Source: Macrostomum lignano
Lineage: Eukaryota
Assembly: GCA_002269645.1 (NCBI GenBank)
Contig: NIVC01000016.1
Location: 434,001-498,000 of the forward strand
Direction of reading: 5' to 3'
DNA length: 64,000 nt
The notes under the pieces are model-generated. The model saw nothing but the letters and a program-made list of their open reading frames with translations, searched no databases and was not told the origin of the DNA. Position 1 is the stretch's first letter. Each line of letters opens with the position of its first letter. The position numbers and the translations under genes were made by a program. This document shows positions 8,201-53,158 of the stretch, piece after piece.

Positions 8201-9162
8201 TCCATCAAAGATGGCCTCGCCGGCTGTGGGGTCTGCATCATCATAATGGCCGCGTAATTGCCACGCATGCCTAGCACAATGGCAAACTCTCCACAGTCTT
8301 CCAGAACGAAGTCCTTGCCATCAGCTCCTGCGCTGCAGAGCTGAACACCAAGGGTACGAGAGTAGAGACTATTATCATCCACTTTGATAGCCAAGCGGCC
8401 TTACAGGCCCTTTGCCACACCACAATGAACTCCTGGACAATCGCTGACTGTGTCCGGCAGCTCAACCTCCTGGCCAGTAGCAATACTATTAGGCTGAAGT
8501 GGATCCCAGGGCACGCAGGGTTTCCGGGAAACGAGCTGGCAGACACCCTTGCCACGAGGGGCGGCTATGGCTCTTTCTTTGGCCTTGCCCCCTTGGTCCC
8601 TATGCCCTTGATGGTCATCAATCGTCAGATGGATGACTGGGCGGACTCCCTCAATAGGGAAAGATAGGCAAGCACCCAAAACTACTAGCAATCTCGTGTT
8701 GCGGTTCCGTGTCCCTCTTGCAGGCTCAAAAACATCCTTCTGAAGCAAAATCGGAAGGATATTCGTGCCCTTGTCATGACCCTTACTGGCCATGGCTACC
8801 TTGCCAGACACTGCTTCCTCCGAGACAACCTCGAGAGTGAACTTTGCCCTTTTGTGAGTACGACAATGAAGATGCTCAGCACTTTGTTTGTCACTGCCTT
8901 TTCTTTACCAGAGACCGGCTATGCTACCTTAAGCTGAACCCATCCATTGACGAGGTCTGCCAGCCCGATAGCATCCCATGGCTTATCAAGTTTCTTCAGG
9001 CGACAAGACGAGCCACTTTCTTCCCCACGGAAGATCACGCTGCAGGACGGACTGGCAGACAATCCTGACTGGCCCATACGCCTCTGACATCTGCAGACCT
9101 TCAGGGGCTAGTGGAATGGGCAACCCTCGCCTCCCTGCTATGTCTATTACCTTGCAGCTAAG
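5288..9162 (+). mobile_element. Decayed, 5'-truncated LOA-clade non-LTR retrotransposon (paralog of 10528-16362), endonuclease domain deleted
   Basis: Colinear ORF1, RT (KGSPHGGVLSPVLWN, YADN), RNase H and CCHC fragments with many frameshifts and stops. Shares the 3' end gcagctaag with the intact copy. Confidence 0.92.
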
Positions 9163-12545: not shown

Positions 12546-12547
12546 AC

Positions 12548-15500: not shown

Positions 15501-16096
15501 CCATCAGCTCCTGTGCAGCTGAGCTCCACCGCAAGGACTTCAAGGACAGAAGAATCTTCTTCCACTCTGACAGCCAGGCCGCTTTACAGGCCCTGTGTCA
15601 CACCACTACGAACTCCCGAACAGTCCGCGACTGTATCGGGCAGCTCAACAAGCTGGCTCGGAGGAACACCGTCCGGCTCACGTGGATCCCAGGACACGCC
15701 GGCTTCAAAGGTAACGAGCTCGCCGACTCCCTCGCTAAGGCGGGCTGTTCCGGCTCGCCCCTTGGCCCCGTGCCCCTGGCCCCCATCCCCGCCACAGTCA
15801 TTAATCGTCAGATTAACGACTGGGCGGACATCCTGCACTTGCGCAGATGGGATGGTATCTCCAACTGCCGCCAATCTCGTGCGGCAGTGCCCAATCCGTC
15901 CCTCAAGCTGCGGAGAATCCTTTTGAATCAAAATCGAAAAGATATCCGCGCTCTCACTATGACCTTCACAGGTCACGGTTGCTTTGTCAGGCACTGCTTC
16001 CTCCGATGTGTTCGCCGGAGTGAACTCTGCCCCTTCTGCAGCCTCGAGAATGAAGATGCCATGCACTTCGTCTGCTACTGCCCGGCCTTCAACTGA
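12548..16096 (+). CDS. LINE ORF2: AP endonuclease, reverse transcriptase, RNase H, CCHC finger (1182 aa)
   Basis: QVNLQH, IQEP, GDINAHH, SDH (APE); PGPDG, RPISL, QGGVLSP, YADD (RT); FTDGS, QNE, SDSQAA, WIPGH, GNELAD (RNase H); CPFC..HFVCYC. The stop at 16094-96 is probably premature. Confidence 0.97.
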   Translation: MTVSQGIHCLQVNLQHSIAASVNLLKHTDQYVPGIILIQEPWTLRGSPQHVPTGYQCLTAGTREGNLAPRSCIMVSSSINAWLRSDLSTRDICVIQSEDILPGRTTLIASVYLPGDGEMIPVELVTLVELCSTRNYELLVAGDINAHHTHWGSSDINQRGEDFLAYIATTTLEFCNSGSTPTFNNGRRSEVLDATLATPRLFQSTREWRVLPEASLSDHKFISFTLASARNAGQLYWKRNARNTDWTAFRLALEETYRCTSAPVSINTCEEADEFAAALTDSLTAAFEASCPLKAYKGKQSAPWWNPQLGDLRRRAKRLHRRAQKTKNPADQTAYLNSIHEFKRQVRNAKTNKWREYCEELEGSRPTSRIVKALTLDKMSKLSSVKRADGSLTENPGETLEAMLTAFFPNEPARPGPPDHSVGGHVLADSIITEDRVTKAVSSFKPFKSPGPDGVVPAFLREAVKCTGFLRNLCRLLKACIVLGFVPKSWTEAKVVFIPKPGRPDYRSIKSFRPISLTSSLVKLLERLVLWRLLSVELKNKPLSENQHAFRAGRSTESALHVLVDMLEKAVLGNGYALAVFLDIVGAFDNVLFEAFDRALRARGTHSHLTRWIMYMISHRTATAHLLGHQRTVTVCKGSPQGGVLSPVLWNMVIDELLQDSHLDPILKVGYADDVTAVASGPSPETLRDLLQNFIRSAERWADRCGLRLSETKTVAIMFTSRVNWRIRPLKLYGVEIPSCKQTKCLGVTLDHRLSWSTHVQAKTKKALAILAQLRRAVGTTWGLTPKRLWWIYTAMVRPAVTYAGLVWTSALQIKTCHEALKKVQGRACRMILNAPLSAPFDGLNAFLCLPPLDIFVRREAAKTTRRLIEAGVSFKPQRAMAKRKLLPHSDLCLKVLEESGSAAVLSDAEPRSLNLYQRFKVTIPSRENANDSWAPQEVHCFTDGSSKDGLSGFGVCILINGRVIATHAQHTGRLSSVFQNEVLAISSCAAELHRKDFKDRRIFFHSDSQAALQALCHTTTNSRTVRDCIGQLNKLARRNTVRLTWIPGHAGFKGNELADSLAKAGCSGSPLGPVPLAPIPATVINRQINDWADILHLRRWDGISNCRQSRAAVPNPSLKLRRILLNQNRKDIRALTMTFTGHGCFVRHCFLRCVRRSELCPFCSLENEDAMHFVCYCPAFN

Positions 16097-23377: not shown

Positions 23378-24088
23378 ATGGCCGACGAACCATTGCGCAC
23401 ATACCCGAGGAAAAGAATCTATGGCCAGCGCAGAAGTAGTCAAGAGGAAAACGAACCCCCGCGAATTAGAGCATTGCAGTTGGCAGAATGTGGAGAAGAG
23501 TATAAAAAGCTGAGATTGGACCGGCAGGAGGAAGAAGTCCACAAAGAGTTAAAAATTGACATCGACCTCGAGGCACTAGGAACAGCGACACGAGAAGAGG
23601 AGCTGAGAAAAGAGATGGAGCAATTCATGCAGGACCTGGTCCAACATTTAGAACGCAAAGTAGAGGAAGAAGAGGAGACGAAGCCGCAGGAGGAAGAGCG
23701 CGAAGAAGAACCGACTGGCTCAGACGCGCCAGTGGCAGCTGTAGCAGAACCGCAGATTCAGCTGCTGCCAAGCCCCTTCGGCCCGATACAATAGCCAAGG
23801 GCGGCGCCACGAGAACTCGAACCCCCGAGGCGAGACGAGGAGGCCTTCAAGCAGCTGTTCAAGGCCAGCGTTAAAGCCTTGAAGAAGGCCATCCTGTCCA
23901 GTGGCAGGACTGGGCAGTGGGACCACCAATTACCGGCAGCCTGCCAGGAGTACCCACCCTCCCTCCCCCCTATTCCCTATTATTTGTTTCTCAATTTCAA
24001 GCAGCCACATTATCTCTTTATGACTAGCAGCGATAAGCCCACGACAATTTGTCCTATACACAGGACCTCTACACCTGCCTTCAGGTAA
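23378..24088 (+). CDS. Accessory ORF downstream of Gypsy pol (acidic, coiled-coil-like), in-frame TAG at 23792-94
   Basis: ATG 2 nt after the stop of the post-integrase ORF. The reading frame continues past the TAG to 24088. No family recognised. Confidence 0.5.
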
Positions 24089-24789
24089 TTATAATTTTAT
24101 TTTAGTCGGCCGAATCTATTTGTCAATTTCAAACTTAAATCCAAGACTGGTGCTTGGTTCATGCTCATCGTGTTCCAAGTTAAAGTTTTGGCACGCCACT
24201 CATACGCCTCTGCCTTGCTTCTACAGACTTCTGCAGTCTCTTTCGTTCCTTTTATCCCAAATTCAAATTGCGTACTCGACACGCATCGCCACATCCGCTG
24301 GCATCTTAATAACACTACTCACCAGCTGAGTTTCTAACGCTAATCTGTTCAATTTCAATTAAAGGCATCAACGCGCAAATCGCCGCCTCCGCTGAATTTT
24401 ATACCAAAATCTACTCAAATTATAATAAAACTCAATCCAAGGATGAGGCTTAGCTTTTCTTGCTGCTTCTATGACAAATATTTTAACTGCTGCACCGCTG
24501 AGCTATATTATAATTAGTACAGGCTCATCTGCCGACTACCAGTTCTACTTTATGCAACTGTTCAACACTTCAAAATTGCTCTAAACAAACTCACACTTCT
24601 ATAATTGACACTACAGCTGCCGAAGCTTTGCATATCCAAAATTTACTTTTATAAAACAAAAATCTGACCCTGGATGGATGACCGCAAATCACGCTCAGAT
24701 GCTATTGCTTCACGCTATTTCAAATCTTTATTGTTGCAAAATAGCAAATTATTTTCAACTCTTAATTGCAAGACCGCTCGAAGTAAACC

Positions 24790-25660
24790 CATAACACAGA
24801 TCCTTGCATCAAATTGCGTTCTGGTACCCAACTCGGACAACCTCAACAACAAGAGCCGCCTGCAACATCCACACCAAATTCTGCCGGTGTTGCTGAAAAT
24901 CCTATTGATATTTCTGGTGACTCTACTGGTATCGGTGGACATTCTACTTGTATTAGTGGACATTATACTAACGACGACACCCAACAGCAACTGACTCAGT
25001 CAGCAGCTACTCCAGCTACATTTCGCCATCTACCTGGCCCCTACCAAGAAAACACTATCATTGGTACCAGGGACGAAGAACAGCCTCCTGAATTGTACGA
25101 ATAACAACAACGGTAACATTCTCGACAGCTACTTCTGCAACCTAATTTGCAATCTGATCCTTTGAATCAGAATAACGCAAATATTCAGGAACCTGACGAT
25201 AACGCTGCAATGGCAGAAGCACTGACACAACAATTTATTAATGCTGTCCGAGCCCAGAGACCACACACTGCAATCTCAGCTAGTACCATTAACGAGATCC
25301 GCGAAAGTCTCAAAGAGATTGATTAACTCCACGATTTCGCTTCTTTCATCATGGAATATGACCTATAAGCGAGGACGTTCAACTTGGACGACAACGCGAA
25401 GCTCCGCATCTTTCCTCGGCTCCTCAATGATCGCCTAAAAATCGAATACGCCGCTTTTCCCGCCGAGACACAAAATGACTACAATCAACTAGTTCGCTCT
25501 TTGTCCGACAGAATAGCGGTACTCACTCTCGGATCTACTTCGGCGCTACATCATATCGCCAACCGCCGGAAACTCCCGGGTGAACCTTCATCCAGTACTA
25601 CACGGACATTCGCCGCAAACTTCGCTCTGCTGGCTCTTGGGCTAAGATAGCAAACTGATG
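24790..25660 (+). pseudogene. Second, unrelated LTR-retrotransposon gag remnant
   Basis: N-terminal LRSGTQL; AKLRIFPRLLNDRLKIEYAAFP..DYNQLVRSLSDR..ALHHIANRRKLPGE..YYTDIRRKL. Contains stops and frameshifts. Confidence 0.65.
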
Positions 25661-25759: not shown

Positions 25760-27341
25760 GTTTTCAGTCACTTGAACGACTAAAAGAGCTCGACAAGAAG
25801 TCAGCTGCCATCGCACGGCGCTTCAGTCGACTCAAAGAATCAGTTGCACTCAGATTTGCGCAGAAAGTTGCGGCGACAGCCCGTCCGACACGAGCAGAAG
25901 CTTCAGTGAGCCACTTATTAACTTCAACTCGGACCACTCATGACGTACCAACCACTATAGAGCTGTCTAGCTCTATAGTGGCGCAACCAAGCAACAGTGT
26001 AGCCAGTGTTGGCAGCAGCTGGCAGCCAGCATTGGCAACCGGGGGATGTAGCAGTGGCGTCCAGACTCCCATGGTCGTCGAGCCGGCTCGCAGTATTCAG
26101 ACAACGACGATGAGGACGTAACTTCTAGATCTATCGTTGAGGAACCAGGCGAAGAAGCTCCAGATGACGACTATTGGAGTGGCGCTCCAATGGCATTGGA
26201 CGCCATCGAGCAGTGCGACGATTGTGAGGACTTTACTGAAGATGACCGCCCACCAGAGGATGAGAATGTACCATGTGTTGGCAATGGAGCCACCCATAAC
26301 CCAGAAGCTATCGATATGCAGCCGCGTAGGAGAAATGGCCTCTTCGCGAATTCACGTACCCCTGTCTCATCAACGTGCTCCCCGAAGTTTCCATGAGCTC
26401 GGAATGTTTCGGGGCCACGAACTTGAGGCATGGTTAATCGTCTACGGCCCTATGGTGATGGAAGGCATCCTGCCCGACCGCTACTACTGGCACCTTCAAC
26501 TACTGTCCACGGCCATGTTCTGGATCGAGCGCCTCTAATGGAAGTGATGAAAGCCAGCCGGCTTCTGCACTACTTTTACAGTCAGCTGCCTTAGATGTAC
26601 TCCAACATGGCCCTTACGTAAAATGCACACCAAGTTTGTGAGCACTTTGTATCGTACGTAACTTTATACGGGCCAATGTGGAGGATGTCTGCAGGCTTGT
26701 TTGAGTCGTCGCATGCAAATCTTCGCACCAAAATCCACGGCTCCAGGAATGTTGACGCCGAAGTTGCCGGCCTTCTACAGGGCCAATTGGCGCGAAGGCA
26801 AATGATGGCCGAATTGCAACTCCCTAACATCTTCAGCGAGGGACCACCAAATGGTGAGGTTCAACTGCCGGATGGTGTGCGACTGCGCAATCCTATTCGT
26901 CGCCAATTGGCGGGCGGTGACACACGGTATGGCAAAGCAGTACTGACCAGCGGGCTACGCATTGAAATATTCATGCCTCGCCTAATCCACCAGCGCGCCG
27001 CCTCGTGCTTTGTTACTGTCCTCATCCCTGACTCTCGTCAGCCGTTTGAATTCGCACGAATTGAGGAAATTCAACTCCGGGACAATTGTGCATGGGTTCG
27101 CCTACGCCGCCTTCTGACTGTGGAGCCGCACGAGGACAATCATCCGTTGTACCGCTTGACTGGCGAACCGGACCACGGCGGATGCTCAGTCGCACACGTT
27201 CGGCGCCTGCATGCCAATTCATTTTGCGCAGTTGACAAATACTATTTCGAAATCCCTGCTAACTACGTACTCGCTACGTGTTGTGTGAACGACCGCTACG
27301 TAGAATTCCTCCCCCATATTCAGTTTTCTTACGCAGCGTGA
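25760..27341 (+). pseudogene. CACTA/EnSpm-type transposase remnant with an internal deletion
   Basis: PRSFHELGMFRGHELEAWLIVYGPMVMEGILPDRYYWHLQLL, then NAHQVCEH..GPMWRMSAGLFES..KIHGS. This is the animal EnSpm C-terminal pattern, here joined directly to an acidic N-terminal part. Confidence 0.8.
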
Positions 27342-27362
27342 GAATTGTATGTACTCATTGTA

Positions 27363-27564
27363 CGTAGGGTGTCCCAAAAAAGGGAAAAATCGTTGCACAG
27401 GCTTTCTGGTAGAACAATATAATTTCTTAAAACTCACATCACTATAATAAGTAAACATTCGAAAGTTCTAAAGCTTTTTAAATCGAGTAAAAATGTCACC
27501 TGTTCATTCAAAAGTTATGACTACTACAGTTAGAACAAGGGGTGAGGGTTAGAGGACACCCTCG
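27363..27564. mobile_element. Tc1/mariner-like MITE (~200 bp)
   Basis: TA|cgtagggtgtcc ... ggacaccctcg|TA: imperfect 11-12 bp TIRs with TA flanks. Confidence 0.55.
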
Positions 27565-27970
27565 TATATCAAAATGTAACGTGTCAATTGGCCCTTTGTC
27601 ACAATGTTTCAAAAATGTTTCACAACACAATGCTTCTTTCCGTGTCACGTCTGCACATTGCTATGTGGTATCACAAGAATTTAAATTTTTATTTATTAAC
27701 GTCTAGCACCGCCATTTCTCCTGTATATATACATGTAAGCGCGTCTTTGCAACTCTGTATGGCATCCATATGTACATGACCTTTTAGTTTACCTTTTCAT
27801 TTTGCTCTTTTCCAGAATGCGTTCTTCAACTGTGTTTTGCTTATATACAGCATCTGTGTCCAAGTGTGTTTTTGTGCCATTTGTAATATGACTTCACTTA
27901 TGCCACTTCTATAAGTCTAGTGTACGTAAATACAGCGATTTGGCCTATCGGAAATTTAATACACCCTTAG

Positions 27971-28186
27971 GCCAATCAGGTCAATCGTTCGTTCGCTATT
28001 CAGAAACTAACCTTGATTTGTTAATTTGTCACTAAATTTGGCTTCTCACTAAAGATTTCCCGTCTAGATTAGTATAGTAATGGCCGCAAAACTGTATGTC
28101 TGCTGTCTGTCAGTAAAGTCAGTAATCTACTAGGTATGTAGGGAAATTGGTACATGTATTTGCATTAATACGAGCGTATATAAATA
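27971..28186 (+). promoter_or_regulatory. Putative Pol II promoter upstream of the CtIP-like ORF
   Basis: GCCAATCAG at 27971, TATATAAATA at 28177-28186, splice-acceptor-like tgtgcttttcag ending at 28375. Confidence 0.3.
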
Positions 28187-28338
28187 CAGGGGTATCGTAT
28201 TCCATGAAGATAGAATATATAAGGGTATCTTATTGCGTCTGAGAATGTTGTTCATTGTCAGTTTGTCAAGCGTCTCTACTTACTAGTAACGTAATAGTAA
28301 TAAATTGTTAACAATTTCCTAGTGCACAGCCCAGCAGC

Positions 28339-29097
28339 ATGGTATTCTCCAAACTCAGATGTGTGTGCTTTTCAGACATGTCGAACGACCTAAGCCCTAG
28401 AGAAGTTAACTTCTCCGCCATCATGGATGACCTCCTTCGAGACGTGGCGCGAACTATGTCGCCGACTCTTGTCGACCTGATCGGTTACCGGTCCTCAGCT
28501 GATTGGGCAGAGTCGCAGGATCCTATGTGTGACGCAGGTTCACCGTCTCTGTTTGACGACATTGAGCCGGCTGGCTCGACTGCGAACGACGCCAATGACG
28601 ATCAGCTTCGCTACAACGCCGAGACGCAGCTCGGTTCGCCGTCTCTGTTTGACGAAATTGAGCCGGCTGGCTCGACTGCGAACGACGCCAATGACGATCA
28701 GCCCGCGGCGCGAGACTACGAGCCGGCTGAGAACTTAAAGAAACTGCGCGCGGAGTATAACCGCCTGCCTGACCCGCCAAATCAAACGAATTACGCTTGC
28801 GTACGCGTTGTTCGAAAACGGGCGGATCGGCAGGAGCTGGACCCGCACTGCTGCCCCGACTGTGAGGCATGGTTTTCTAATTTGTCGCCTCGTACAAAGC
28901 AGAGACGGCTGCAAGAGCACGGGCGGCACCGCAGTAACCAGCCTCACCAGAAGCGCGACCCTAACTTTTTAAAAATTGAAATGCCTGACACTCAGCCAGA
29001 AGCGCCCTTTGAGGCCATGAGGTTAGGCAAGAGGCGCATGCGTCCACTGACGGGTGCTAGCGCCGGGCCGTCTAACACACGGGATAAGAAGCTGTAG
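28339..29097 (+). CDS. Protein with a CtIP/Sae2/Ctp1 C-terminal domain (likely start ATG 28378, 239 aa)
   Basis: VRVVRKRADRQELDPHCCPDCEAWFSNL..LQEHGRHR..PNFLKIEMPDTQ parallels the CtIP C-terminus as recalled (EVVRKKEERRKL.GHTCKEC..YY..SRHR..NFWEVGFPSTQ). The frame is open and has a 32-aa internal duplication. Confidence 0.8.
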   Translation: MVFSKLRCVCFSDMSNDLSPREVNFSAIMDDLLRDVARTMSPTLVDLIGYRSSADWAESQDPMCDAGSPSLFDDIEPAGSTANDANDDQLRYNAETQLGSPSLFDEIEPAGSTANDANDDQPAARDYEPAENLKKLRAEYNRLPDPPNQTNYACVRVVRKRADRQELDPHCCPDCEAWFSNLSPRTKQRRLQEHGRHRSNQPHQKRDPNFLKIEMPDTQPEAPFEAMRLGKRRMRPLTGASAGPSNTRDKKL

Positions 29098-31130
29098 GCA
29101 GCATAGGCTGTACGTCACTGTTAATTAATTAAAAATATTGTACTGTAACTACTACTAGTAGTACTTCTAGTCGAGCCAGCCGGCTCAATGTCATGAGTAG
29201 TGTAGCGAGTAGTAGTAGCGTTTCTCTTTGGTATGGGCAGCTCCCAGCAGTAGCTTGCCGGCTTCCATGCCATCTCCGTCTCATAGCTAAAATATATTTG
29301 CGTCGACTTGTCAGCGTCGATTGCACATATGCTAATGAAAGTAAGGAAGGATATTGAATTCCATTACGAAAAATCATTGCAGAATAATGGGAGAAGGAAA
29401 GAAGACTGACAGAATGAATTCCAAGAAGGACCACGAGAAGCGGGCCGAAAAAGAGAAGCGGAAGATAAAGAGCAGCGGAAAGATAGACCTGATACTGACA
29501 ATACTGGCCTTGTGAGAAAAGCTAGCCGTGTGATTCAGAACTATATGAGCTAGTTAGTTGAGAAGCTGAGCATCCCACACAACACACTTGATGAGACGAA
29601 GTTTTTTTCAATAAAAGCAGAATGACTCAGTATTGTCTGTAGCTTAAGAAGTAATTTGCAGTTTCCACTAGCTTGAAAAATCTTGCTGCAATAGGAATTG
29701 AATGCCCACCCTGCCCAAACTCAATTGTGTCATGCTTAAGTAAGATTGAAAATCTGGCAGAGCATCAAGACAGCTCGCTTTTTTCTAAAATTTTAAAATC
29801 GTTTCCACTCAGCGACATTCTGCTTTAAGCTCAGATTTACGAGAATCTGGTAAGCAAACTCAACCATCACTTACATAACATATAGAATATACTCGTAGAA
29901 TAGATAATGTAGATTAATTAATTATATGTGGATTTTCTCCTTTGACAATCCTCTTAGCGCCAACTCGAATAATAGCAATTGAAAACCAAATGGAAGTTGA
30001 CAACGCGGATGAGTACTGAAAAAGTTTAGAGCACCTGCTGCAGTCAATTTTCAAGAGCAACGAGTTGAGCAACTGGAAGGTGTGGGTTCGCAAATACAAC
30101 GCTATTGCAAAACTACCGTTTCCTATATCCACCAGCACGGGTGGCCTACCTAAAACCTCCAATGAAAAAGAAAAAAAAAGAAAAAGAATCCATCCTCGTG
30201 AGAAGCTGTGGATGCTCGGGATCCATCGAATGAAGAATTCCGTACTGGTAGATTTACTATTCATGTTGTAAAGGATCAACTCATCCAGATCTTCAACAAG
30301 CTAAAGCGCCTTAATAACTATGGAGTCAAGTATGGCATCCAAGCAGGAGCAATTTACAACAATATGAAGCGTCCTCTCGAAGGATCAGTTCAAGGAACTA
30401 AAGACATCCACCCGCTTCAGCAATGCGTGGATCAACTTTCAAATGAAGCTTGCGAGTTTGGCGCAGGCACACCCACGCCTACATGGGTGCACGCGATCAC
30501 TGTATCAGATTCAGTCGTGCATTAACATCTGCCGAAGTCATGAAGAAGCTGGATGAAGAGGCAGCGGAAGAGTTGTTGCGACAACCTCAAATTTGAAAAC
30601 TGCAGTATCTTTTTTGGGGTGGGTGCTGTGAGCTATTGGTTGAATGAGACAGATGGCTTATTATAGGTTTGTGCATAATTGACAACAACCTCAAATTTGA
30701 AAACTGCAGCATGTTTTTGGGGTGGATGCTAAGGAGACATTATCATTCATTAATAACTATCTATTCTATTTGACATGGTACGTTTTCTAGCGACTTGCAT
30801 GAGTCACTTCTATTGGATGCTAAAATTAAAAAAATTTTGGCAGACATTTTGAGCAATTAAAATAATCTGGCCTCTTTTGTGCTCGCGAGAGGTCTTTTGT
30901 GTCTGAGAGTCTTTTGCTTTTTTTGTTACTAAATATAGATCCACGCAAGATAGGTGAGCCACTAGACTTGTACAATGGAAAGGGTCTTTTTGATACTAAA
31001 AGCACAATATCCAACTCCGTAAAAGACAAATCTACCTTTCATAGGAGAGGCAGGTGCAGCAGCAGGCTTTATCGCTACAACAGTTAACGCAGCTCAACTC
31101 TGTAGATTACTTAAATTTATTTTTATAAAA

Positions 31131-31535
31131 ATGGCCTTCAATAAACCACTATTTCTTGGTTCTGCTATAGACATTCAGTTAGCAGTAACTAAATTGCCAC
31201 CCATTTTCTCCACTGGAAAATATCCTGGCGAATTTTATATTCCAGGATATTCTTTCACTGGCCAAGGTACAAATTTAGACAAGAGACTCAATCTAATTAC
31301 AGACTGGCCTCAGTATGACAGTCTACCAATTAACCCAATAGATTGGACTGCTTACTATCATGACAAAAGCTATAGAGATGCTGAAAAGACGTCTTCAACT
31401 TCAGAGGAAGCCTTAGCAAAGAAGCACATTGCTGATGAAAAAATGATAACTTATTTAGAGTCTATTCCAACCAGTGACTTGTCTGTGAAAGAGAGACTCG
31501 TTCGAAATCTAGTAAAGCGTATTATCAAAGCTTAA
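31131..31535 (+). CDS. Parvovirus-type phospholipase A2 domain protein of Maverick/adintovirus
   Basis: PGYSFTGQGTNLDKRL..PINPIDWTAYYHDKSY..KHIADEKM..ERLVRNLV. The stop is probably premature (KA*VRFGLG versus the usual KAK..G.G). Confidence 0.85.
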   Translation: MAFNKPLFLGSAIDIQLAVTKLPPIFSTGKYPGEFYIPGYSFTGQGTNLDKRLNLITDWPQYDSLPINPIDWTAYYHDKSYRDAEKTSSTSEEALAKKHIADEKMITYLESIPTSDLSVKERLVRNLVKRIIKA

Positions 31536-31589
31536 GTTCGGTTTGGATTAGGCATTCATACTCACAACCCAAACAATTGTATAGACTGT

Positions 31590-32430
31590 CTAAATATATA
31601 CAGTGAGGGTCTTAGCTATAATGATGCAGTGAAATTGCATAGGGAATACAGAAAACCAAGACTGTTTAGAAAAATGATTCACTATGCAAACGACACAATT
31701 TGGCATGCAGATATCATTATCCTACCACCTGAAAGAGGTTACAAATATGCTCTCACTATCATAGATGGTTTTACACGTTACGCTTGGGCAGTTCCTTTGA
31801 AAAAAAGACGGGAGCGAAAGTTACAGAAGCTTTCCAAAAAGTATTTAAGGAATCAGGAAGACGATCCGAGAGACATTGTGTAGATGAAGGCAAGGAGTTT
31901 TATAATCAGCATATGTATAAGCTATACTCATTTTCAAAAGACAATATAAGAAAGAAAAATGAAAACGGGGAGTATATTAAAAAGATGTTATAAATTTATG
32001 GTGAGTCTAAGAATGCAATGATTGAGAGGTTCAATCGTACTCTCACAAATAAACTCTGGTTTGAATTTTATCTACAGGGTAATCAGAAGTGGCTCCATAT
32101 ATTGCAGGCTATTGTTGCAAAGTACAACAACACAATCCATTCTGAGATTCTCATAACTCCTTCAGAAGCATCTAAGATAGTGCCGAAACCTTCCATCCAG
32201 TTTACAAATGAGAAAAGAAACTTTAAAGTAGGTGAAAAAGTTCATATCTATAGATTCAAAAGCACTTTGAAAAGGGTTGAAAGGGCTATTGGAAAATTTC
32301 AGAGGTCTTTACGATTAAGAAAGTTGTGTACTCAAATCCCATAACTTACATTATTGAGGATGAGAATGGAGAAGAAATTATTGGATCATTTTACAAATCC
32401 CAGCTTCTACCAGCAAATTTTTCAACTAAA
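31590..32430 (+). pseudogene. Maverick retroviral-like DDE integrase (frameshifted)
   Basis: KLHREYRK, WHADII, YKYALTIIDGFTRYAWAVPLK, VDEGKEFYN, IERFNRTL, YNNTIHS, FKVGEKV, TYIIEDENGEEIIGSFY. Confidence 0.92.
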
Positions 32431-33769: not shown

Positions 33770-36700
33770 TTAGTTAGGCGTGTGCCATTGCTTTTCGGTG
33801 ATCTTCAAGGCTGGGCTTAAACGCTGGGGGTGATTAAAAAACCCGGAAATGTAAAATACGGTTGCTGAAACGGTAAATGTTCTTTTGTGACAGTGCAAAG
33901 GAGGTGTGTGCCAACGATACATTCTTGAACTTTAGACCAAAATACTACACAAAGGTAAAAAAAATTGGCTGCTGTTAGGCTTTAAGACTTTTTTGTTCGG
34001 TGTGAAAGGTAAAAATCCAGACTTTTTCAAACACAAATCGGTTGCTGAAATTTATTCAGCGTGGCACAGTTGTGCCAACTTGAAAATATTGACCTAAACG
34101 AAGGTATCGATGTGTTCCACACTTCAGAATACATTTAACCGCAACATTTCACACTTTTTTGGCAATTTTGTTGTGAGCAGAGAATCGGAGCATAATTAGC
34201 ACAAATATTTTCGTTGCATGAATCATTGATCAAGCTCTTGTATGAATATAGTGAGCAAAACTTATGCAGATAAAAGAAATAGTACGAAGAATAAAATTCT
34301 TTACCATTTGGTTAGCAGCATAAAGCTTTTTTATGCTGCTGTTTGTTTACTTCAGCAGAAATGAATAAATTCAAAATTTCAGACGTGAGCGGTATCGGGC
34401 ATCAAAAGACGCAAATAGATATGATCGGCATGAATAGCAAATGAAAATTAAATTCATTCATGACCGATTTGAATTTTGTAAAAAATATCGATGTAATACG
34501 TACTGATACTTTATATCAATGTCTAATTGTACAGGACGAACATGATATTCAGACTTACCTACCTACCTACCTGTACATGAAATTTCAATTTCAGGACCTT
34601 TCAGTTTTGGTGAACCATGGCGGATGATTCTTTAAGTAAGTTTACTATGGCTCTGAATCTGCGGCGTGAAAGGCGCAGTAGATATCCTTATATTGGCTCT
34701 TATATTAGCCTTATAAGAGTACAGTACATGTATATTCGTTTTCTCCGCCTCTCCTTATTCTAGAACAGCAACTGACTCGTTCAAGTCTGCTTGATTTCTT
34801 CAAGGTGTGCGGCATTGACCCTGAGGAGTATATTTGTTCTCCACTTCCTAGCCATTGTCGGTCAGATGACGATCGCTTGCCGCGTCTCTGCCGATTTTTT
34901 CACGTTCCTCTTTCTGCTGCGAACAAAAATACGCCTATAAGTTTCTGCTACGTCATTACAAGGACATTTCTGAAGACGTTCCCATCGAAACAGCTGAATG
35001 TAACGCAGACTCTTCAGCTGATGAGACGTGCTGCGGGTAAGATAGCATTTTTATGCTTTACTTACTATTTTTGCACGCCTGTTGCGAACTGTCCGTGCCC
35101 TTTATTTAGTCAGATGACATTGGCACTGACAATGTCTTTTTTTAAAACCATCTCTTTTCAGTTCTTCCTCCTCGACAATTCTGCCTATCTTTCACCAGAG
35201 CTTCAGCGAGCCCGCGGGACTTCTCCGTGACGGTGTTTTAAAGCCAGATTGGTTTAGCGACGTGGTTTGCCTTTTTGCTCATTCGGTTGAACCATGCTGT
35301 CTCGCAAAAAAAGTAGGAAAGTTTCGCAAAAAGACAGGAATTCATTACGCTTATGTCTACTGCTGCGAGCCTACCTGTCCAGCAACGTTTATCATGGAAG
35401 CTTAAGATGCAAGTTTGACATCATGGGAGCTCCAAACAGTCACTGCACCGTTGGAGAACCACCCTGCGGTTCGAAGTCGGCGGCTGACTGGTGAACGGCG
35501 TTATCAGCTCGCGAGATCGACGCTGGTTTCGAATTCTTACAGGGTCGCCGCGGCCATTGCTGCCAACGAACTCCTCAGTGAGGTGCCTTTGTCGGAGGCC
35601 ATACGCATTGCAGCTGAGCGACTGCGCAGAGCTGAGCTGGGATGTCCAGACATGGATGACCTGCTAGAACTGCGCCGACTTGAGAAGGTCCTACAACCTG
35701 CGTATATTAGAAAGGTTATCCAGAGTGAGGGTCGAGTCGAGAGCATCGTTCTATTTCATTTCCGTCCCTTTCAGAGTCTACGGGAGATGCAGCTGAGGGG
35801 CTGGCCCATACATATGGGAATGGATTCAACTGGTGCTCCAATCCATCAGCGCCCCAGCAGTTGCACCAAGCCCATCTACTATCACGCTCTGGTGCTTCAG
35901 AACCCAACTGTCGGTGGAAAAATGATGCCAGTTTTAGAAGTTCTGACGACAAACCAGACAGGTATCACTCTTGCGTTTTTGCCTGGATATTTGGCTTAAA
36001 GAGTGCAAGACTGCCTTGCCCACGCTACGAGTCTCGCAGGTGGTTACAGATTTTAATTTCGCCACCTTACACGCTCTTATCGGCTCCTTTCACAATTAAA
36101 ATATCTGAAGGAATGTTTTCGCAATTTATTTGGAGAAGTGACTCGGATCATCTACCGATCGTTGGTCTTGGCCGAAGCCACCTGGTCAAGGAGATGACGC
36201 GTCTAAAGGAGGTCACCAGTTGCAGAAACAAGGCGGTCAAGCAATTCTGGTTACGCTCGATGGCCTGTCTAATTACTGTCAACAGTCTTCAAGCCGCAGA
36301 TAGGCTGCTGACAGCACTATACCTTCTTCTTAGTTCCCCAACGGAGGCTACAGTGGAAGCAGTTGACCGCAGACTAAAATGCTCTCCTAAGGAATTTCTT
36401 AAAATGTCAAGCAACGCCGATAGTGTCAGCATACGAGATTTTGATATAGATCAGCAGGACTTTGAAGAGTCACTTGCAGTCGACGTGATCCCTTCAGGCG
36501 AAACTATCATGCGACAGTCTCCATTCTGGCAGCGAGCCGAGCGCATTCGTCAAGAAGTGCTTCGAGAAGTAACCAATCCATTATTCAATGAGCAACATGA
36601 CAATCTTAACGTTTACATGTGCCTTGATCTAGCTAAACGCATTACCAATATGTTCATGCCCTATCTTCCTCTAATCAGCGGCATTATGCCTGGCAGCTCA

Positions 36701-38790
36701 TGGTTCACCAAAGGTCACACTGAACACTGGATGGGCTTATTAAAGCACCAGGTTTTCGAAAATAAGACAGTTGGACTATCCAAGTTCATCCAGACTCTTC
36801 ATGCGCACCACAACGGCAATGAAGTGCTGTTCAAAAGAGATCTGGGATGCACAATTTCAGCGTCATCCCTGCAGCCACTGCTGGGATCTGCATCAGTGCC
36901 ATCCCCACAGCCACCGCTGGAATCCGCATCAGCGCCATTCTCGCAGCTACCACCAGAATCCACATCAGCGCCATCCTCGCAGCCATTGCGATCAGGTGCG
37001 CCGTAGTGAACCTATGTTTGAGATGAACCCTCCTCCGGTTCTGGTAATCTCCTCCACGGACGCCATTTTTGGGCATTGGCCAAGCAGTCCTTTCTCAAGT
37101 AGTACACCTGTTTCCGAATAGTAACATCCGGTAAGATAAAATTTGTGATAGCCATCATACTTCAACATATCATCAGACAGTATGTAATCTGCAAAATGTA
37201 CTTTTAAAGGTATGTGCTTCGAGCTACAACCTACAGGAATGGGGCCCACTATCTGTCTAGAATCTGGTGCGCCATAGGCACAATTTGATACAACAACCTA
37301 GCAAGAAATAGGGGAGTTATGGCTGCTGCAATCGAACGTGGGCGCCAGCCGGCACTTGGAAACAGAGTAAACCTGTACATCTACACCATTTCACATTGCG
37401 AGCAGCCATAATATTATTATCTTTATTCAATGCCAATAAATTGACTAGACATTGTTGCTATAAATTGACTAGAAAACACTTTTCCGTACTTTCATTTTCA
37501 GGCAGCTTTTTAAAACTTATTTTTGCTTACATATACATACTCATACTACACGCGCCACGATATTACGGGTTTCGTACCTTATACTTGTTCTCGAACTTCA
37601 ATGTTATGTTTCTGTAGTCATTGTAAAGAACTTTTACCCAGACACAATGACAAACCAAAATGGTCATTATTACACACTTTTTCAATCTAGTAAAGGTTGT
37701 GTCATTTGCAACTCGCCAGGCATTTATTTTTAGCTAATTTAATAATCAGCAATTTTATTACGCAACATACAGTTCTTCCAAACAAGCAAAAAATCAATAA
37801 CATTAAAATTAGACAAAAAGGTTGCAAGAAAACACAGTAAAATTCTGAGAGATAATAGCCAAGAGATAAGAAGAGAAGAGGAAAGGAGAGGGGAGGAGAG
37901 AGAGGAGGAGGGAAGAAGAGAAGAGAGAAGAGAAGAGAAAGGAGAATAAGTTGCCTTATCAATATGATCTTATCTATTTGACCCCCAGCATGCGTAATCA
38001 ATTTACACCATACCCTTTGCCAATTAGATCACCCACCCCATCTCTCATCCAATCAAATCAAATTTTAAAAATGTGAAATAATGGCCACTCTAAAGTGTGG
38101 AATAATGACCGCAAAAGTGTATTAATTTGACCGGTGTGTTGGATAAAAATTCTTTTACAATGAATAAAAAATTAACATAGAATCCTAATTTTCTGAACAA
38201 AAAGCTTTATAAATATCAATAAAGCAATAAAAAAGGCACAACATATCAAAAGATAAACACTGGATCTGCCTCCTATCAAATGCAATAACAATTTTTGTGC
38301 TGAAAAATGAAAACTTCTTATCTCTGTAGTGTATTTTTTTGGGAAAAAGTGCCTTCAAAACTTTTCTAAGAAACAAGGTTTCCCATCCTTTTACTTAAGT
38401 CATCCTTGCTAAAATATTGCAGAGAAATGCAATGTGGTTTATGGCACACTTGGTTTCCTTCATCTAGAATAAAGATTTCAAGCTGGCACAACTGTGCCAC
38501 TCTGATTTTGGATCAGCAGCCACTTTTCTTGCAAAATATTCACTTTTTGCATCTTTTACTTTGAATGAAAGAAACACTATATGTTGATTACCCAAATTTT
38601 ATTGCCCAAAAGTACTTTTCTGGTCCCTAGTTTATGAATTTGGGATTGGCACACACCTATTCACTGTCATGTCACACAATCATAGCAACCATTCCAGCAA
38701 CTGGTATTTTTGCATTTCAGAATTTTAAATCCTTACAGCATTGAAGGCCAGCCTACAAGGTCATCAAAAAGTGATGGCATATACATAACT
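33770..38790 (+). mobile_element. MULE of the NOF/Foldback type with ~380-bp diverged TIRs
   Basis: 33770-34150 aligns by eye to the reverse complement of 38410-38790 (for example gtggcacagttgtgcca.cttgaaa). No TSD found. Confidence 0.75.
34800..37006 (+). pseudogene. NOF-like MULE transposase (frameshifted)
   Basis: MDSTG..YYHALVL..PVLEVLT (D1), VVTDFNFATLHALIGSF (D2), GRSHLVK, SPFW, YLPLISG, HTEHWMGLLK (E). The C-terminus has a 36-bp x ~3.5 repeat. Confidence 0.75.
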
Positions 38791-38809
38791 GGCAACTATT
38801 TATGTTATT

Positions 38810-39555
38810 TAACTATTTCTAGAGATGGCACAGTCAATTGAAAAAAAATTGGTAACTGGAGTGGCTGCTATGGATCTGTAAGTTAGCAAACAATGCAGAT
38901 GCTAAAGCTGTGAGAACTGTAGCAATTGCTATGAAAAATAGACTTAATAATAAGAAGGATTCAAATACTGGATACATTAGGAAGCTTAAACTTACAACAA
39001 TGTCACTAATGCTCCAAACAGAGGTGGACAATCAAACTATCATTAACACCCTCATTGGGTTCCTTAATTGGCAGAAGATTAGCAAAGGAATTAAATACAA
39101 ATTTACATGGACAAGAAAGACTAGCAATGCTGAAATTTCTTTGGAGCTGCCGAAATGGAAGCTAAGTTAACTATTAATAGCTTTGAGATTTAGATCTTTT
39201 TGCTATTACTTTGTTACCCAGTGCTGAAACAGCTTTTCTAAAATCACTCAATAAGGACATTACTGTATCATTTCTAGAGAGGATAATGGTTGCGCCACAA
39301 CTCATCCAAGGAAGCCCATATACATGGAACATAGCCAACATTTCCAATATGCCACTTGCAATCTTTGTAGCTTTCAAATATGATGTAAACAACCCATTAT
39401 ATATAGTTAATGATCACAAGTATGTGTCTAATGAGACTGGAGCAAATGTAGTAAAAATAACACAGCTTCAAGTCAGATTAAATCAGGTGATATATCTATA
39501 TGACTTTGTTGAAATTGATTTAGTAGCTCAAGTCCAGAAGCATAGACAATTATAG
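38810..39555 (+). pseudogene. Maverick major capsid protein, C-terminal part
   Basis: NTGYIRKL, LIGFLNWQKISKGIKYKFTWTRK, ITVSFLER, YTWNIA..PLAIFVAF, LQVRLNQVIY. Confidence 0.65.
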
Positions 39556-40404
39556 ACAGGGGGAAATACGCCTATGACATTTAAAACATTTGTCAAGCTC
39601 TTTGTTTTATTGTCATTTACTTATTACTAAAAACATTTCAAAAGCCTATAAGTAATATATAAAAAAAAGAGTTTTTAGATATTTTTCAAAACAAAATAAA
39701 AAATGCAAAATGCAACTAATTTAAAAATTATAGCCTCTCGGGGAGACATAGGCCTATTTAATGACCAAATATAATTATATACTAACCATACATGCCCAAT
39801 ACCTGTCTGACCTGTCCAAACTGGACAAATGAAATAGCCGCCGGCCAAGGTAAGTCGCAAAATTGAAAATGCAAAAAAAAATTGGAAAAAAAGAAAGGAG
39901 AAGAAGAGAAAAAGAAAAGAAAGAAGAGAGAAAAGAGATAAGGAAAGAGGAGAGTGAAAGAGAAAGAGAAGAAAAGAGAAAAAGACAAGAAAAGTCATAC
40001 AAAGTGAAAATTAAGTTGCAATCGGGGGAACTAAGCCCTAAGTCACAATTAAGAAGAACTAGGTCACAATCAGGACAAACTAAGTTGCAAATCTGGACAA
40101 AACTAAGTTGCACTGGATGGGTGAAATTTTGAGGTTGGGCATGTATGATACTAACTTACAGCTTACAGAAAGTAGGCCTATAACTATTAGTTCTAGTGAC
40201 AATTTTAATATCCTATCTACAAGACTAAACTACAAGTTATAGGCCTAATTATAGGTTAACTTTCTATTACTTTACTAACTTACTATAGGCCTAGTTTGGC
40301 AAATAAGATGCAGATTCATACTCAAAAGAGGTTAAAACTGGTTAAGATAGGCCCCTAAGAGGAATTGATAAGATAGAGAGAGCTTCCATTTCTATAAATT
40401 ATCC

Positions 40405-41032
40405 GGCAACTGATCAAAAGGGCGACAGATGAAAAGGGTGACAGTTAAAAGGGCGACAGTCAAAAAGGCGACAGGGTATTAGACCAAGAACTACTTAAGT
40501 GGAAGGATGGGAAACCTCGTTTCTTAGAAAATCTTATAATCTTAGCAATAACAATTTTTGTGCTGACAATTTCAATGAAGCGCGAATGATCCCCGTACGG
40601 CCATAGAGGTGCAGCTCCTCTCCCAAGGAGTAATGCGCCGCGTACAGTGCAACAGATACTGAAGTATACAGGCCCAGTACTTCAAATACTAGAGAGAATT
40701 CAGGCGTGGCAACCGCTCGGTGGATGATCTACTGAAGGCGGTTAGTGAAATAAATGGACCTCACTGAACCACATTTTAACATTTAATAGTGTGTGAGTGT
40801 CCAATACATGTCCAGCTTTTATACAACCCCATTTTAACTGCTCGTACAATTTTAACAACGCATTTTAACAAATACAAGTATGATACATGTTTACTGCTTT
40901 TAACAAATACTTTTAATGTACGTGGAACTCGTATTTTCAATATAAATACACTATAAGTATAACTGTCGCCCTTTTGACTGTCGCCTTTTTAACTGTTGCC
41001 CTTTTGATCTGTCGCCCTTTTGACCTGTAGCC
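40405..41032. mobile_element. 628-bp non-autonomous TIR element (MULE/Phantom-like MITE) with an 8-bp TSD
   Basis: TSD AATTATCC at 40397-40404 and 41033-41040. The ~70-bp TIRs are built of four ~16-bp aaaagggcgacag subrepeats. Confidence 0.85.
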
Positions 41033-43699: not shown

Positions 43700-44947
43700 A
43701 TCACAAACCCGAAAAATCACAACTCCGAAAAGCGCCTTCCATCATAAACCCGAAATATCATAAACCAGAAATATTATAAACCCGAAATATCACAAACCCG
43801 AAATATCATAACTCCGAAAGTGTTAGAAACACACATAATAAACCCGAAATATCACAAACCCGAAATATCACAAACCCGAAATATCACAAACCCGAAATAT
43901 CATAAACCCGAAATATCACAAACCCGAAATATCACAAACCCGAAATATCATAAACCCGAAATATCATAAACCCGAAATATCACAAACCCGAAATATCATA
44001 AACCCGAAATATCACAAACTCGAAATATCACACACCCGAAATATCATAAACCCGAAATATCACAAACCCGAAATATCACAAACCCAAAATATCATAATCC
44101 CGAAATATCATAAACCCGAAATATCACAAACCCGAAATATCATAAACCCGAAATATCACAAACCCGAAATATCATAAACCCGAAATATCACAAACCCGAA
44201 ATATCACAAACCCGAAATATCATAACTCCGAAAGTGTTAGAAACACACATAATAAACCCGAAATATCACAAACCCGAAATATCACAAACCCGAAATATCA
44301 CAAACCCGAAATATCATAAACCCGAAATATCACAAACCCGAAATATCACAAACCCGAAATATCATAAACCCGAAATATCATAAACAAACCCGAAATATCA
44401 TAAACCCGAAATATCACAAACTCGAAATATCACAAAAATATCATAAACCCGAAATATCATAAACCCGAAATATCATATATAAACCCGAAATATCATAAAC
44501 CCGAAATATCACAAACCCGAAATATCATAAACAAACACAAACGAAATATCATAAACCCGAAATATCACAAACCCGAAATATCAAAATTCCCGAAATATCA
44601 CAAACCCGAAATATCATAAACCCGAAATATCATAAACCCGAAATATCACAAACTCGAAATATCACACACCCGAAATATCATAAACCCGAAATATCACAAA
44701 CCCGAAATATCACAAACCCGAAATATCATAAACCCGAAATATCATAAACAAATATCACAAACCCGAAATATCATAAACCCGAAATATCACAAACCCGAAA
44801 TATCACAAACCCGAAATGTCATAAACCCGAAATATCATAACTTCGAAAGAATGTAATGATAATGATATCGGGTTTATGATATTTCGGGTTCCAGCAATGT
44901 CCAATATTATTTTGGTTTTCGGTGTTATGATATTTCGGGTTTATGAT
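43700..44947. repeat. 16-bp minisatellite (aaacccgaaatatca[c/t]), ~70 copies, plus a few inverted copies
   Basis: Array at 43700-44850; reverse-complement units at 44862-44947. Confidence 0.95.
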
Positions 44948-52800: not shown

Positions 52801-53024
52801 CAACTATCGTTCACTCACATAACAAAAAAAGCGCATCTTAGGCCCAATGCCTATGATATGTTACATGTCTGGAAATGTACGAGCACGAGCACTGTGTGTA
52901 TTTTATTGTGTACTCAAAGCCGGGAATTTCGGAGAAAGCAAAGGGAAGGGATGAGAGTAAATTTACATGCACATGTAATGAGAGAATATATGGAGAGGGG
53001 TTAAGAGATCTTGATCTCTCTCAC

Positions 53025-53158
53025 TCTCACTCTCTCTGTCTCACTCATTTCACACCCACTCCCACACTGACACACTCTCTCACTCTCACTCTCTTACTCA
53101 CTCACTCACTCACTCACTCACTCACTCACTCACTCACTCACTCTCTCGCTTTTAATTC
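53025..53158. repeat. (CT/CACT)n microsatellite (copy at ~61040-61173)
   Basis: ctcactctct and (cact)n runs. Confidence 0.92.

What the first reader, a model, noticed from the sequence alone, without database searches (positions are those of the whole stretch)
28339..29097. Stand-alone CtIP/Sae2 C-terminal-domain gene inside a transposon cluster
The MRN-activating module of CtIP is recognisable: VVRK, CxxC (28852-63), RHR (28924-32), NF, and a terminal TQ (ATM/ATR-type site), followed by a basic KRR cluster. By eye the CDK site (human T847-P) is replaced by RD and the N-terminal coiled-coil oligomerisation domain is absent. The frame is open, CpG-rich and preceded by promoter-like motifs, while its neighbours (CACTA on the left, Maverick on the right) are pseudogenes. 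Hypothesis: a mobile element captured a cell-cycle-uncoupled CtIP mimic to steer end resection, hairpin opening or removal of protein-blocked DNA ends at its own breaks or termini. I know of no described case, but could not search.
Basis: partly seen in the sequence, partly recalled or inferred. Interest (0 to 1): 0.78.

Follow-up and report, generated by a model that had tools for sequence, protein, structure and literature searches.

The report
Short CtIP-type repair gene among transposons
An intact open reading frame encodes the C-terminal, MRE11-activating part of the DNA-repair factor CtIP/Sae2, closest to a flatworm's own CtIP, but nothing shows that a transposon carries it, so it is most likely an ordinary, possibly truncated, host gene copy in transposon-rich DNA.

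Summary
ORF 28339-29097 (+, 252 codons) scores above Pfam's cut-off for SAE2/CtIP C-terminus. Its best relative among 1.8 billion proteins is the cellular CtIP of the flatworm Macrostomum lignano (E 4e-26, 53% over 108 residues).

The "cell-cycle-uncoupled" substitution (R-D in place of the CDK T-P) is not special to this copy. M. lignano's own CtIP also lacks T-P.

No N-terminal tetramerisation coiled coil was found in the ORF or anywhere in the 64-kb window.

The transposon-capture idea has no support. No terminal repeats, target-site duplication or poly(A) tail bracket the ORF. The window holds no second copy and the viral contig collection holds no relative. The neighbours are unrelated, decayed fragments.

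A strong splice-acceptor-like site lies exactly at the AT-to-GC boundary, 2 nt before the second ATG.

Three readings remain open without the source genome or RNA data: a stand-alone truncated CtIP copy (my preference, about 0.4), the terminal exon of the resident full-length CtIP (about 0.3), or a young dead duplicate. Interest is modest.

The parts
28339..29097 (+). Open reading frame of 252 codons plus stop, from the first ATG: a CtIP/Sae2-family protein
28378..29097 (+). More likely coding sequence (239 aa) from the second ATG. It starts 2 nt after the acceptor-like site and exactly where GC jumps from ~37% to ~57%
   Evidence: direct reading
28359..28375 (+). Polypyrimidine tract ending in CAG, a splice-acceptor-like site (cis or spliced-leader trans-splicing). 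If used in cis, the intron would be phase 1
   Evidence: direct reading; inference
28177..28225 (+). Two TATA-like motifs 115-160 nt upstream of the first ATG
   Evidence: function inferred only
28537..28702 (+). Recent in-frame duplication. Two 70-nt copies (28537-28606 and 28633-28702) are 97% identical and 96 nt apart, which repeats the peptide GSPSLFD[DE]IEPAGSTANDANDDQ
28411..28455 (+). The only predicted helix of the N-terminal half (aa 25-39, pLDDT ~75). Residues 40-129 are predicted disordered
28726..29049 (+). Conserved CtIP C-terminal (Sae2-like) region, aa 130-237: the NRLP block, VVRK, CxxC, RHR, NF, TQ and the basic tail. It is 53% identical to M. lignano CtIP
29128..29133 (+). 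ATTAAA polyadenylation-signal variant 31 nt after the stop codon
   Evidence: function inferred
29169..29192 (-). Perfect 24-nt inverted copy of a segment of the duplicated coding unit (28558-28581; also 28654-28677 at 23/24). These are the only three copies in the window and remain unexplained
25768..27338 (+). Left neighbour, not part of the gene: a broken GC-rich coding remnant on the same strand. The coding signal runs through four open segments in alternating frames (at least three frame changes and two in-frame stops, or unrecognised introns). It has no Pfam match, and the transposase (CACTA/CMC-like) nature is only a resemblance by eye
31023..32341 (+). Right neighbour, not part of the gene: an AT-rich remnant with a PLA2-like segment and an rve integrase core split over several open segments (at least two interruptions). 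It may be Maverick/Polinton-like, but no polymerase, ATPase or protease was found

Best explanation
This is a compact, single-coding-exon copy of the CtIP/Sae2 gene family. It descends from the cellular, flatworm-type CtIP. It is N-terminally truncated relative to canonical CtIP, and it is not cargo of the neighbouring transposons. Translation most likely starts at ATG 28378, directly behind a splice acceptor, so the 5' leader would be spliced or trans-spliced. The 239-aa product has one short helix, a ~90-residue acidic disordered linker with a recently duplicated SP motif, and a complete Sae2-like C-terminal domain. Inferred mechanism: the RHR-containing domain binds DNA, and the C-terminal segment docks on RAD50/NBS1 to promote the MRE11 endonuclease. 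This is the role the CtIP C-terminus has in other organisms. The protein has no T-P switch at the human T847 column, as in its closest relative, and it keeps the T859-type TQ site. Without a tetramerisation coiled coil it should bind DNA but not bridge DNA ends. Shown here: the family membership, the motif content, the absence of an N-terminal domain in the window, and the absence of transposon termini. Inferred: expression, the start codon, the splicing, and every functional step.
For: Family membership: Pfam SAE2 above its cut-off. The best hit is M. lignano CtIP at E 4e-26. A profile of the hit family retrieves human CtIP/RBBP8 structures 7bgf and 4d2h. All 5 invariant residues and 16 of 30 conserved columns are kept, and several deviations (N141, W178, F179, G195, M215) are shared with M. 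lignano. Stand-alone reading: there is no CtIP_N match. A profile of 12 CtIP N-termini finds nothing in any open segment of the 64-kb window (best E 0.3, inside a LINE). tblastn with 24 CtIPs hits only 28594-29091. The 12 kb upstream is filled by a broken unclassified coding remnant and retroelement sequence: a gypsy-type LTR retroelement by Pfam, plus a segment that looks like an LTR/gag fragment by eye only, with no Pfam hit. An ATG lies 2 nt behind the acceptor-like site at the GC boundary, with TATA-like motifs upstream and ATTAAA 31 nt after the stop. The neighbours of M. lignano CtIP (acetyl-CoA synthetase, EMP24), which are conserved at both of its loci, are absent from the window. Not transposon cargo: searches find no bracketing repeats, TSD or poly(A) tail. 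The ORF is intact while both neighbours are broken, and its CpG observed/expected of 1.25 resembles the M. lignano CtIP last exon (1.14) rather than the neighbouring elements. Mechanism from the literature: the isolated CtIP C-terminal domain binds DNA as a monomer but cannot bridge; the RHR motif contributes to DNA binding; T847/T859 phosphorylation promotes the MRN cofactor role (PMC11317151). The C-terminal region is modelled on RAD50 and a C-terminal peptide stimulates Mre11 (bioRxiv 10.1101/2023.03.25.534200 and the Zdravkovic 2021 paper in its reference list).
Against: No stand-alone C-terminal-only CtIP is documented. The short hits in the databases are fragments: P0007 starts 19 nt from the end of its contig, and P0021 has another called ORF on the same strand 14 nt upstream. 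Coiled-coil exons diverge quickly, so the negative profile search is weak evidence. In M. lignano the same protein region is a terminal exon of a three-coding-exon gene, and the acceptor-like site fits a terminal exon equally well. The source genome could not be identified, so copy number and the existence of a separate full-length CtIP are unknown. No expression data exist. The exact protein is not in the public gene-call collection.
Confidence: 0.38

Rival explanations
1. It is the terminal coding exon of the resident full-length CtIP gene. The N-terminal coiled-coil exons would lie beyond transposon-swollen introns or outside the window, and the transposons would be passengers in introns and flanks.
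For: Every eukaryote is expected to carry one CtIP (established knowledge), so this has the highest prior. The closest relative is a cellular CtIP. In M. lignano the linker plus the Sae2-like domain is a single terminal exon of 191 codons. A strong acceptor-like site lies exactly at the compositional boundary. The frame is intact and all invariant residues are kept.
Against: No N-terminal exon is detectable in the 28 kb upstream by tblastn or by a family profile, whereas the M. lignano gene spans only 3.3 kb. The nearest upstream GC-rich segments are transposon-like and broken. The acceptor would be phase 1, while the M. lignano last intron is phase 0. An ATG with a purine at -3 directly follows the acceptor. 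No syntenic neighbours are present.
Confidence: 0.32
2. It is a young, non-functional partial duplicate of the host CtIP terminal exon, copied at the DNA level into transposon-rich DNA and not yet decayed.
For: The region is dynamic: there is a 96-nt in-frame duplication at 97% identity inside the ORF, and an unexplained 24-nt inverted copy just downstream. It lies in a transposon-rich, duplication-prone region, with an 8-kb tandem duplication at 99.5% identity in the same window. The homology covers only what is the terminal exon in M. lignano and begins at an acceptor-like site, as expected if a genomic exon with part of its intron was copied.
Against: All 252 codons are open, where random sequence of this composition would be expected to carry about 9 stops. 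All invariant residues are kept. An ATG, TATA-like motifs and a poly(A) signal are in sensible positions. None of this proves selection.
Confidence: 0.15
3. It is cargo of a mobile element (CACTA/CMC-like, Maverick/Polinton-like, Pack-type or Helitron-like) that captured the CtIP C-terminus.
For: The ORF sits between transposon remnants. The left remnant is on the same strand and has a similar GC content (53% against 57%). The gene is compact and intronless, with an AT-rich upstream region. One candidate donor at the end of the left remnant and a weak acceptor at 28322 would be in frame (direct reading; one chance in three). The 24-nt motif occurs in direct and inverted orientation.
Against: No TIR, LTR or TSD pairs bracket the ORF at any distance within the window. 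The left remnant has no transposase Pfam hit and is broken several times, while the ORF is intact. The right remnant differs strongly in composition (36% GC, CpG observed/expected 0.51). IMG/VR viral contigs hold no CtIP-like gene. The searched literature holds no report. The supposed adaptive R-D change sits at a site that the closest cellular CtIP also lacks.
Confidence: 0.1

Closest known systems
Macrostomum lignano CtIP (PAA88737.1 / PAA54340.1; hypothetical protein BOX15_Mlig004387g1/g2)
   Same: It is 53% identical over the last ~108 residues. It shares HCCPDCEAWF, the GRHR context, xPNF in place of T-P-x-N-F-W, IEMP, and the GKRR.RPL tail. The linker plus domain is encoded in one exon.
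   Different: The M. lignano protein has an N-terminal coiled-coil exon and a long low-complexity middle part (481+ aa). Its gene is flanked by cellular genes at two syntenic loci. The window ORF has neither the coiled coil nor those neighbours, and the region upstream of aa 130 cannot be aligned.
Human CtIP/RBBP8 (and vertebrate CtIPs among the hits)
   Same: The Sae2-like C-terminal domain has VVRK, CxxC, RHR, the T859-type TQ and a basic tail. The family profile retrieves RBBP8 structures 7bgf and 4d2h.
   Different: There is no tetramerisation domain or coiled coil. R-D replaces the CDK T-P (T847 column) and L replaces the nearly invariant W of NFW. The protein is about a quarter of the length.
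Yeast Sae2 / fission-yeast Ctp1 (Pfam SAE2, PF08573)
   Same: They are short members of the same family, defined by the same C-terminal domain that activates Mre11-Rad50. The Pfam model built on them matches the ORF. (for the role of the C-terminus)
   Different: Both yeast proteins have an N-terminal self-association region (established knowledge). None is detectable here.
Gene fragments transduplicated by DNA transposons (Pack-MULE, CACTA or Helitron captures)
   Same: A partial host-gene segment, apparently one exon, sits in transposon-rich DNA.
   Different: The defining feature, the fragment lying between the termini of the element, was tested and not found. Such captures are usually multi-copy and decayed, whereas this ORF is intact.

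Membership tests
CtIP/Sae2/Ctp1 family | Sae2-like C-terminal domain (Pfam PF08573) above the curated threshold | tested here: met
   25.9 bits against a cut-off of 19.8, E 2.3e-5. 22 family hits by phmmer, best E 4e-26.
CtIP/Sae2/Ctp1 family | CxxC and RHR motifs at the family's invariant columns | tested here: met
   C172, C175, H197 and R198 (plus R164) are invariant across 23 sequences.
CtIP/Sae2/Ctp1 family | CDK S/T-P site at the human T847 / Sae2 S267 column | tested here: not met
   R-D at that column. 86% of homologues have T and P there, and M. lignano CtIP also lacks it (Q-A).
CtIP/Sae2/Ctp1 family | ATM/ATR-type TQ site (T859 column) and a C-terminal basic R-R-R-P-type tail | tested here: met
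   T218-Q219, with T in 90% of homologues, and GKRRMRPL at 230-237.
CtIP/Sae2/Ctp1 family | N-terminal oligomerisation (tetramerisation/coiled-coil) domain | tested here: not met
   No CtIP_N hit. Only one 15-residue helix is predicted. A profile of 12 CtIP N-termini finds nothing in the ORF or the whole window. It could still lie on an exon outside the window.
Cargo of a CACTA/CMC DNA transposon | Located between terminal inverted repeats of the element, next to a recognisable transposase | tested here: not met
   No inverted repeats bracket the ORF. The left remnant has no transposase Pfam hit at E<=1.
Cargo of a CACTA/CMC DNA transposon | Several genomic copies that share flanks and target-site duplications | not testable with these tools
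   The source genome is not available. The window holds only one copy, and exact-protein look-ups were negative.
Gene of a Maverick/Polinton-like element | Lies inside an element with TIRs, a protein-primed polymerase, integrase, ATPase, protease and jelly-roll capsid genes | tested here: not met
   To the right there is only a broken rve integrase (31.2 bits, below the cut-off of 32.6), a PLA2-like segment, and one weak DJR hit (E 0.013) 7 kb further on. No TIRs were found. The composition is very different. No relative was found in viral contigs.
Processed (LINE-mediated) retrocopy | Poly(A) tail and target-site duplication at the ends of the copy | tested here: not met
   There is no run of 6 or more A within 1 kb after the stop, and no flanking direct repeat longer than 10 nt. 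The 5' edge coincides with an acceptor-like site, which a retrocopy would not carry.

The most novel reading that the evidence does not exclude
It could be an expressed, selectively maintained 'mini-CtIP' that consists only of the linker and the MRE11-activating C-terminal domain. It would have no oligomerisation domain and no CDK switch. It would either be spread by a mobile element or be kept by the host as a constitutive or dominant modifier of end resection. No such natural stand-alone form turned up in the databases or the literature searched here.
Probability: 0.15. Interest if true: 0.65.

Novelty: new member of a known kind. Interest (0 to 1): 0.3.

Why it matters
If this is simply the host CtIP, or a fragment of it, the finding is ordinary annotation: a fast-evolving repair gene sitting in repeat-rich DNA. 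It would matter only if transcript and genome-wide data showed an expressed, conserved C-terminal-only CtIP alongside a full-length gene. That would be a natural separation-of-function variant (MRN activation and DNA binding without DNA bridging or CDK control). It would bear on how much of CtIP is needed for resection. One solid by-product stands: the CDK T-P site, which is conserved in 86% of the aligned homologues, is missing from both this ORF and the Macrostomum cellular CtIP. This points to lineage-specific rewiring of resection control in these flatworms.

Tried and rejected
(1) The word-index protein search was run three times (whole ORF, left-neighbour piece, region 135-245) and returned nothing. 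The left-neighbour query was badly chosen, because the length filter excludes full-length transposases.

(2) Exact-protein look-ups of the 252-aa and 239-aa products and of the LINE ORF2 were all negative, so the organism and the copy number stay unknown.

(3) PDB sequence and Foldseek searches with the ORF or its model gave no hit. Only the N-terminal domain of CtIP is represented in the PDB.

(4) The metagenome scan gave one locus (L004), which proved a spurious 35-residue match. The viral-contig scans were empty.

(5) Two candidate upstream exons were rejected. ORF 23379-23795 (acidic, helical) directly follows the gypsy integrase and shares that element's purine skew. Segment 25768-25905 has splice-like borders but is phase-incompatible with both acceptors. 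Neither matches the CtIP N-terminal profile.

(6) The short database CtIPs (P0004, P0005, P0007, P0008, P0021, P0022) are not precedents for stand-alone forms. Those I inspected are contig-end or split gene calls, and one carries an in-frame stop.

(7) Intron-position conservation with M. lignano is only approximate, and the phases differ.

(8) Rfam and tRNA scans gave nothing that identifies the organism.

Candour note: my scripts printed stop-to-stop open segments of the window, as the ORF listing does. These implicitly bound the interruptions in the transposon genes. None of those positions is carried into this report. Short literature motif names recalled from memory were used only as leads, never as queries.

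Full report
1. What is in the sequence.

The frame 28339-29097 (+) is open for 252 codons. Pfam's SAE2/CtIP C-terminus model matches at 25.9 bits against a curated cut-off of 19.8. An exhaustive phmmer pass over 1.84 billion representative proteins returned 22 hits at E<=1e-3, all aligned to residues ~122-238.

The best hit (E 4e-26; BLASTP 53% identity over 108 residues) is a protein of the flatworm Macrostomum lignano, PAA54340.1/PAA88737.1. A profile built from the ORF and its hits retrieves the solved N-terminal domain of human CtIP/RBBP8 (7bgf, 4d2h). The hits are therefore true CtIPs.

Five residues (R164, C172, C175, H197, R198) are invariant across 23 family members and are kept. Of 30 columns with at least 70% majority among homologues, 16 are identical in the ORF.

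2. Anatomy of the unit.

GC rises from 35-38% (27350-28380) to about 57% inside the ORF. The step coincides with a polypyrimidine tract ending in CAG at 28375, and a second ATG follows 2 nt later at 28378. I therefore take 28378-29097 (239 aa) as the likelier coding sequence, behind a cis- or trans-splice acceptor. Spliced-leader trans-splicing is established in flatworms, which I state from my own knowledge.

TATA-like motifs lie at 28177 and 28216, and ATTAAA lies 31 nt after the stop.

AlphaFold2 with the family alignment gives mean pLDDT 63.5. It predicts one short helix (aa 25-39), disorder to about aa 129, then the moderately confident helices of the C-terminal domain.

A 70-nt segment is repeated 96 nt downstream at 97% identity, in frame, which doubles an acidic SP-containing peptide. 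A 24-nt piece of that unit recurs as a perfect inverted copy 72 nt after the stop. The window holds only these three copies, against 0.01 expected by chance. I have no explanation for it.

3. The 'cell-cycle-uncoupled' argument.

The M. lignano cellular CtIP has Q-A at the same place, and both have xPNF where others have T-P-x-N-F-W. Other deviations of the ORF from the family majority are also shared with M. lignano: N141, W178, F179, G195 and M215. Loss of the T-P site is therefore a trait of this lineage's CtIP. It is not evidence of adaptation to a mobile element.

4. Is it carried by a transposon?

Nothing in the window says so.
- No inverted or direct repeats bracket the ORF at any scale.
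- There is no target-site duplication or A-tail.
- There is no second CtIP-like sequence in the window.
- IMG/VR viral contigs hold no relative.
- The searched literature has no transposon-borne CtIP.

The left neighbour (25768-27338, same strand) is a GC-rich coding remnant broken several times and has no Pfam match. Its CACTA/CMC-like nature is only my impression by eye. Further left lie a segment (about 24000-25650) that looks like an LTR/gag fragment by eye only, with no Pfam hit, a gypsy-type element with a split pol, and an intact LINE.

The right neighbour (31023-32341) carries a PLA2-like segment and a broken integrase core. One weak double-jelly-roll hit lies 7 kb further on. That may be a Maverick/Polinton-like relic, but it is AT-rich and CpG-poor (36% GC, observed/expected 0.51) whereas the ORF is not (57% GC, 1.25). 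The ORF's CpG excess resembles that of the M. lignano CtIP last exon (1.14).

5. Stand-alone gene or terminal exon?

In M. lignano the gene has three coding exons within 3.3 kb: the coiled coil, a low-complexity middle part, and a 191-codon terminal exon holding the linker and the whole Sae2-like domain. It lies between acetyl-CoA synthetase and EMP24 genes at two homeologous loci.

In the window, none of those neighbours is present. tblastn with 24 CtIPs hits only the ORF. A profile of 12 CtIP N-termini finds nothing in any open segment of the 64 kb.

Two candidate upstream exons were examined and rejected.

These negatives favour a stand-alone, truncated copy, but they are weak, because coiled coils diverge quickly. 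The acceptor-like site fits a terminal exon just as well. Every database 'short CtIP' I inspected proved to be a fragment, so there is no precedent for a C-terminal-only form.

The window's organism could not be identified. Weak hints point to a relative of Macrostomum: the CtIP affinity, and a 16-nt satellite at 43741-44837 whose unit matches 12 of 16 positions of a satellite beside the M. lignano CtIP locus.

6. How it would work (inferred).

Published work shows that the isolated CtIP C-terminal domain binds DNA as a monomer but cannot bridge DNA, which needs N-terminal tetramerisation. The RHR motif contributes to DNA binding, and T847/T859 phosphorylation promotes the MRN cofactor role (PMC11317151). 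[quoted passage not shown]

A 239-aa product as encoded here would therefore be expected to bind DNA and to engage MRN without a CDK switch and without end-bridging. None of this was tested here.

7. Verdict.

The domain identification is correct. The capture-by-transposon interpretation is unsupported.

My ranking is:
- stand-alone truncated CtIP copy of cellular descent: 0.38
- terminal exon of the resident CtIP: 0.32
- young dead duplicate: 0.15
- transposon cargo: 0.10

The finding is a new member of a known family, of modest interest unless genome-wide copy data and transcripts show an expressed, conserved C-terminal-only form.

Noticed in passing
window 11016-16096 (+); older copy 6471-9139: A LINE has two uninterrupted ORFs: a 509-aa ORF1 and a 1182-aa ORF2 with endonuclease, reverse transcriptase and RNase H domains. 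A diverged partial copy (72-76% identity) lies 5 kb upstream.
   Followed up: partly
window 50683-55984 and 58676-64000: A 5.3-kb direct repeat at 99.5% identity with a spacing of 7,993 bp, which is a recent tandem duplication of an ~8-kb unit. The unit contains a MULE transposase ORF (56035-57678, minus strand) and a G-rich satellite (58071-58680). The second copy runs off the end of the window.
   Followed up: partly
window 43741-44837; L001 16756-17328 and L005 16712-17363: A 16-nt satellite (69 copies) has a unit that matches 12 of 16 positions of a 16-nt satellite lying next to the CtIP gene at both Macrostomum lignano loci. This is a weak hint (A/C-rich composition inflates the chance of a match) that the window comes from a related flatworm.
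   Followed up: partly
window 28558-28581, 28654-28677 (+) and 29169-29192 (inverted): A 24-nt sequence lies inside the duplicated coding unit and recurs as a perfect inverted copy just after the gene. The similarity does not extend beyond the 24 nt, and the window has no other copy. Its origin and meaning are unknown.
   Followed up: yes
window 31023-32341 and 39187-39552: A parvovirus-VP1-type PLA2-like segment lies directly upstream of a broken rve integrase. A faint double-jelly-roll-like match (E 0.013) lies 7 kb downstream. This may be a decayed Maverick/Polinton-like element, but no polymerase, ATPase or protease was found.
   Followed up: partly
window 23379-23795 (+): A 138-codon acidic, helical ORF starts a few nt after the stop of the gypsy-type integrase and shares that element's purine skew. 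It may be an extra 3' ORF of the retroelement. It has no family match.
   Followed up: partly
window 38362-40531 and 40405-41032: Two pairs of inverted repeats (55 nt at 84% and 70 nt at 89%) look like termini of small non-autonomous DNA elements.
   Followed up: no
L002 (Logan SRR31628425 contig, 596-880): A CtIP-like sequence from an unidentified organism is about 40% identical to the ORF and shares its HG[RK]HR.NQP context. It carries an in-frame stop inside the conserved NFW block, with homology continuing beyond it.
   Followed up: partly
window 35861-37006 (+), repeats 36857-37000: A 381-codon ORF without any family match ends in four 36-nt tandem repeats (67-81% identical to the first).
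   Followed up: no
window 6037-6115 (-): A tRNA-Gly(GCC)-like gene predicted by ARAGORN lies at the edge of the older LINE fragment. It may be a tRNA-derived repeat.
   Followed up: no
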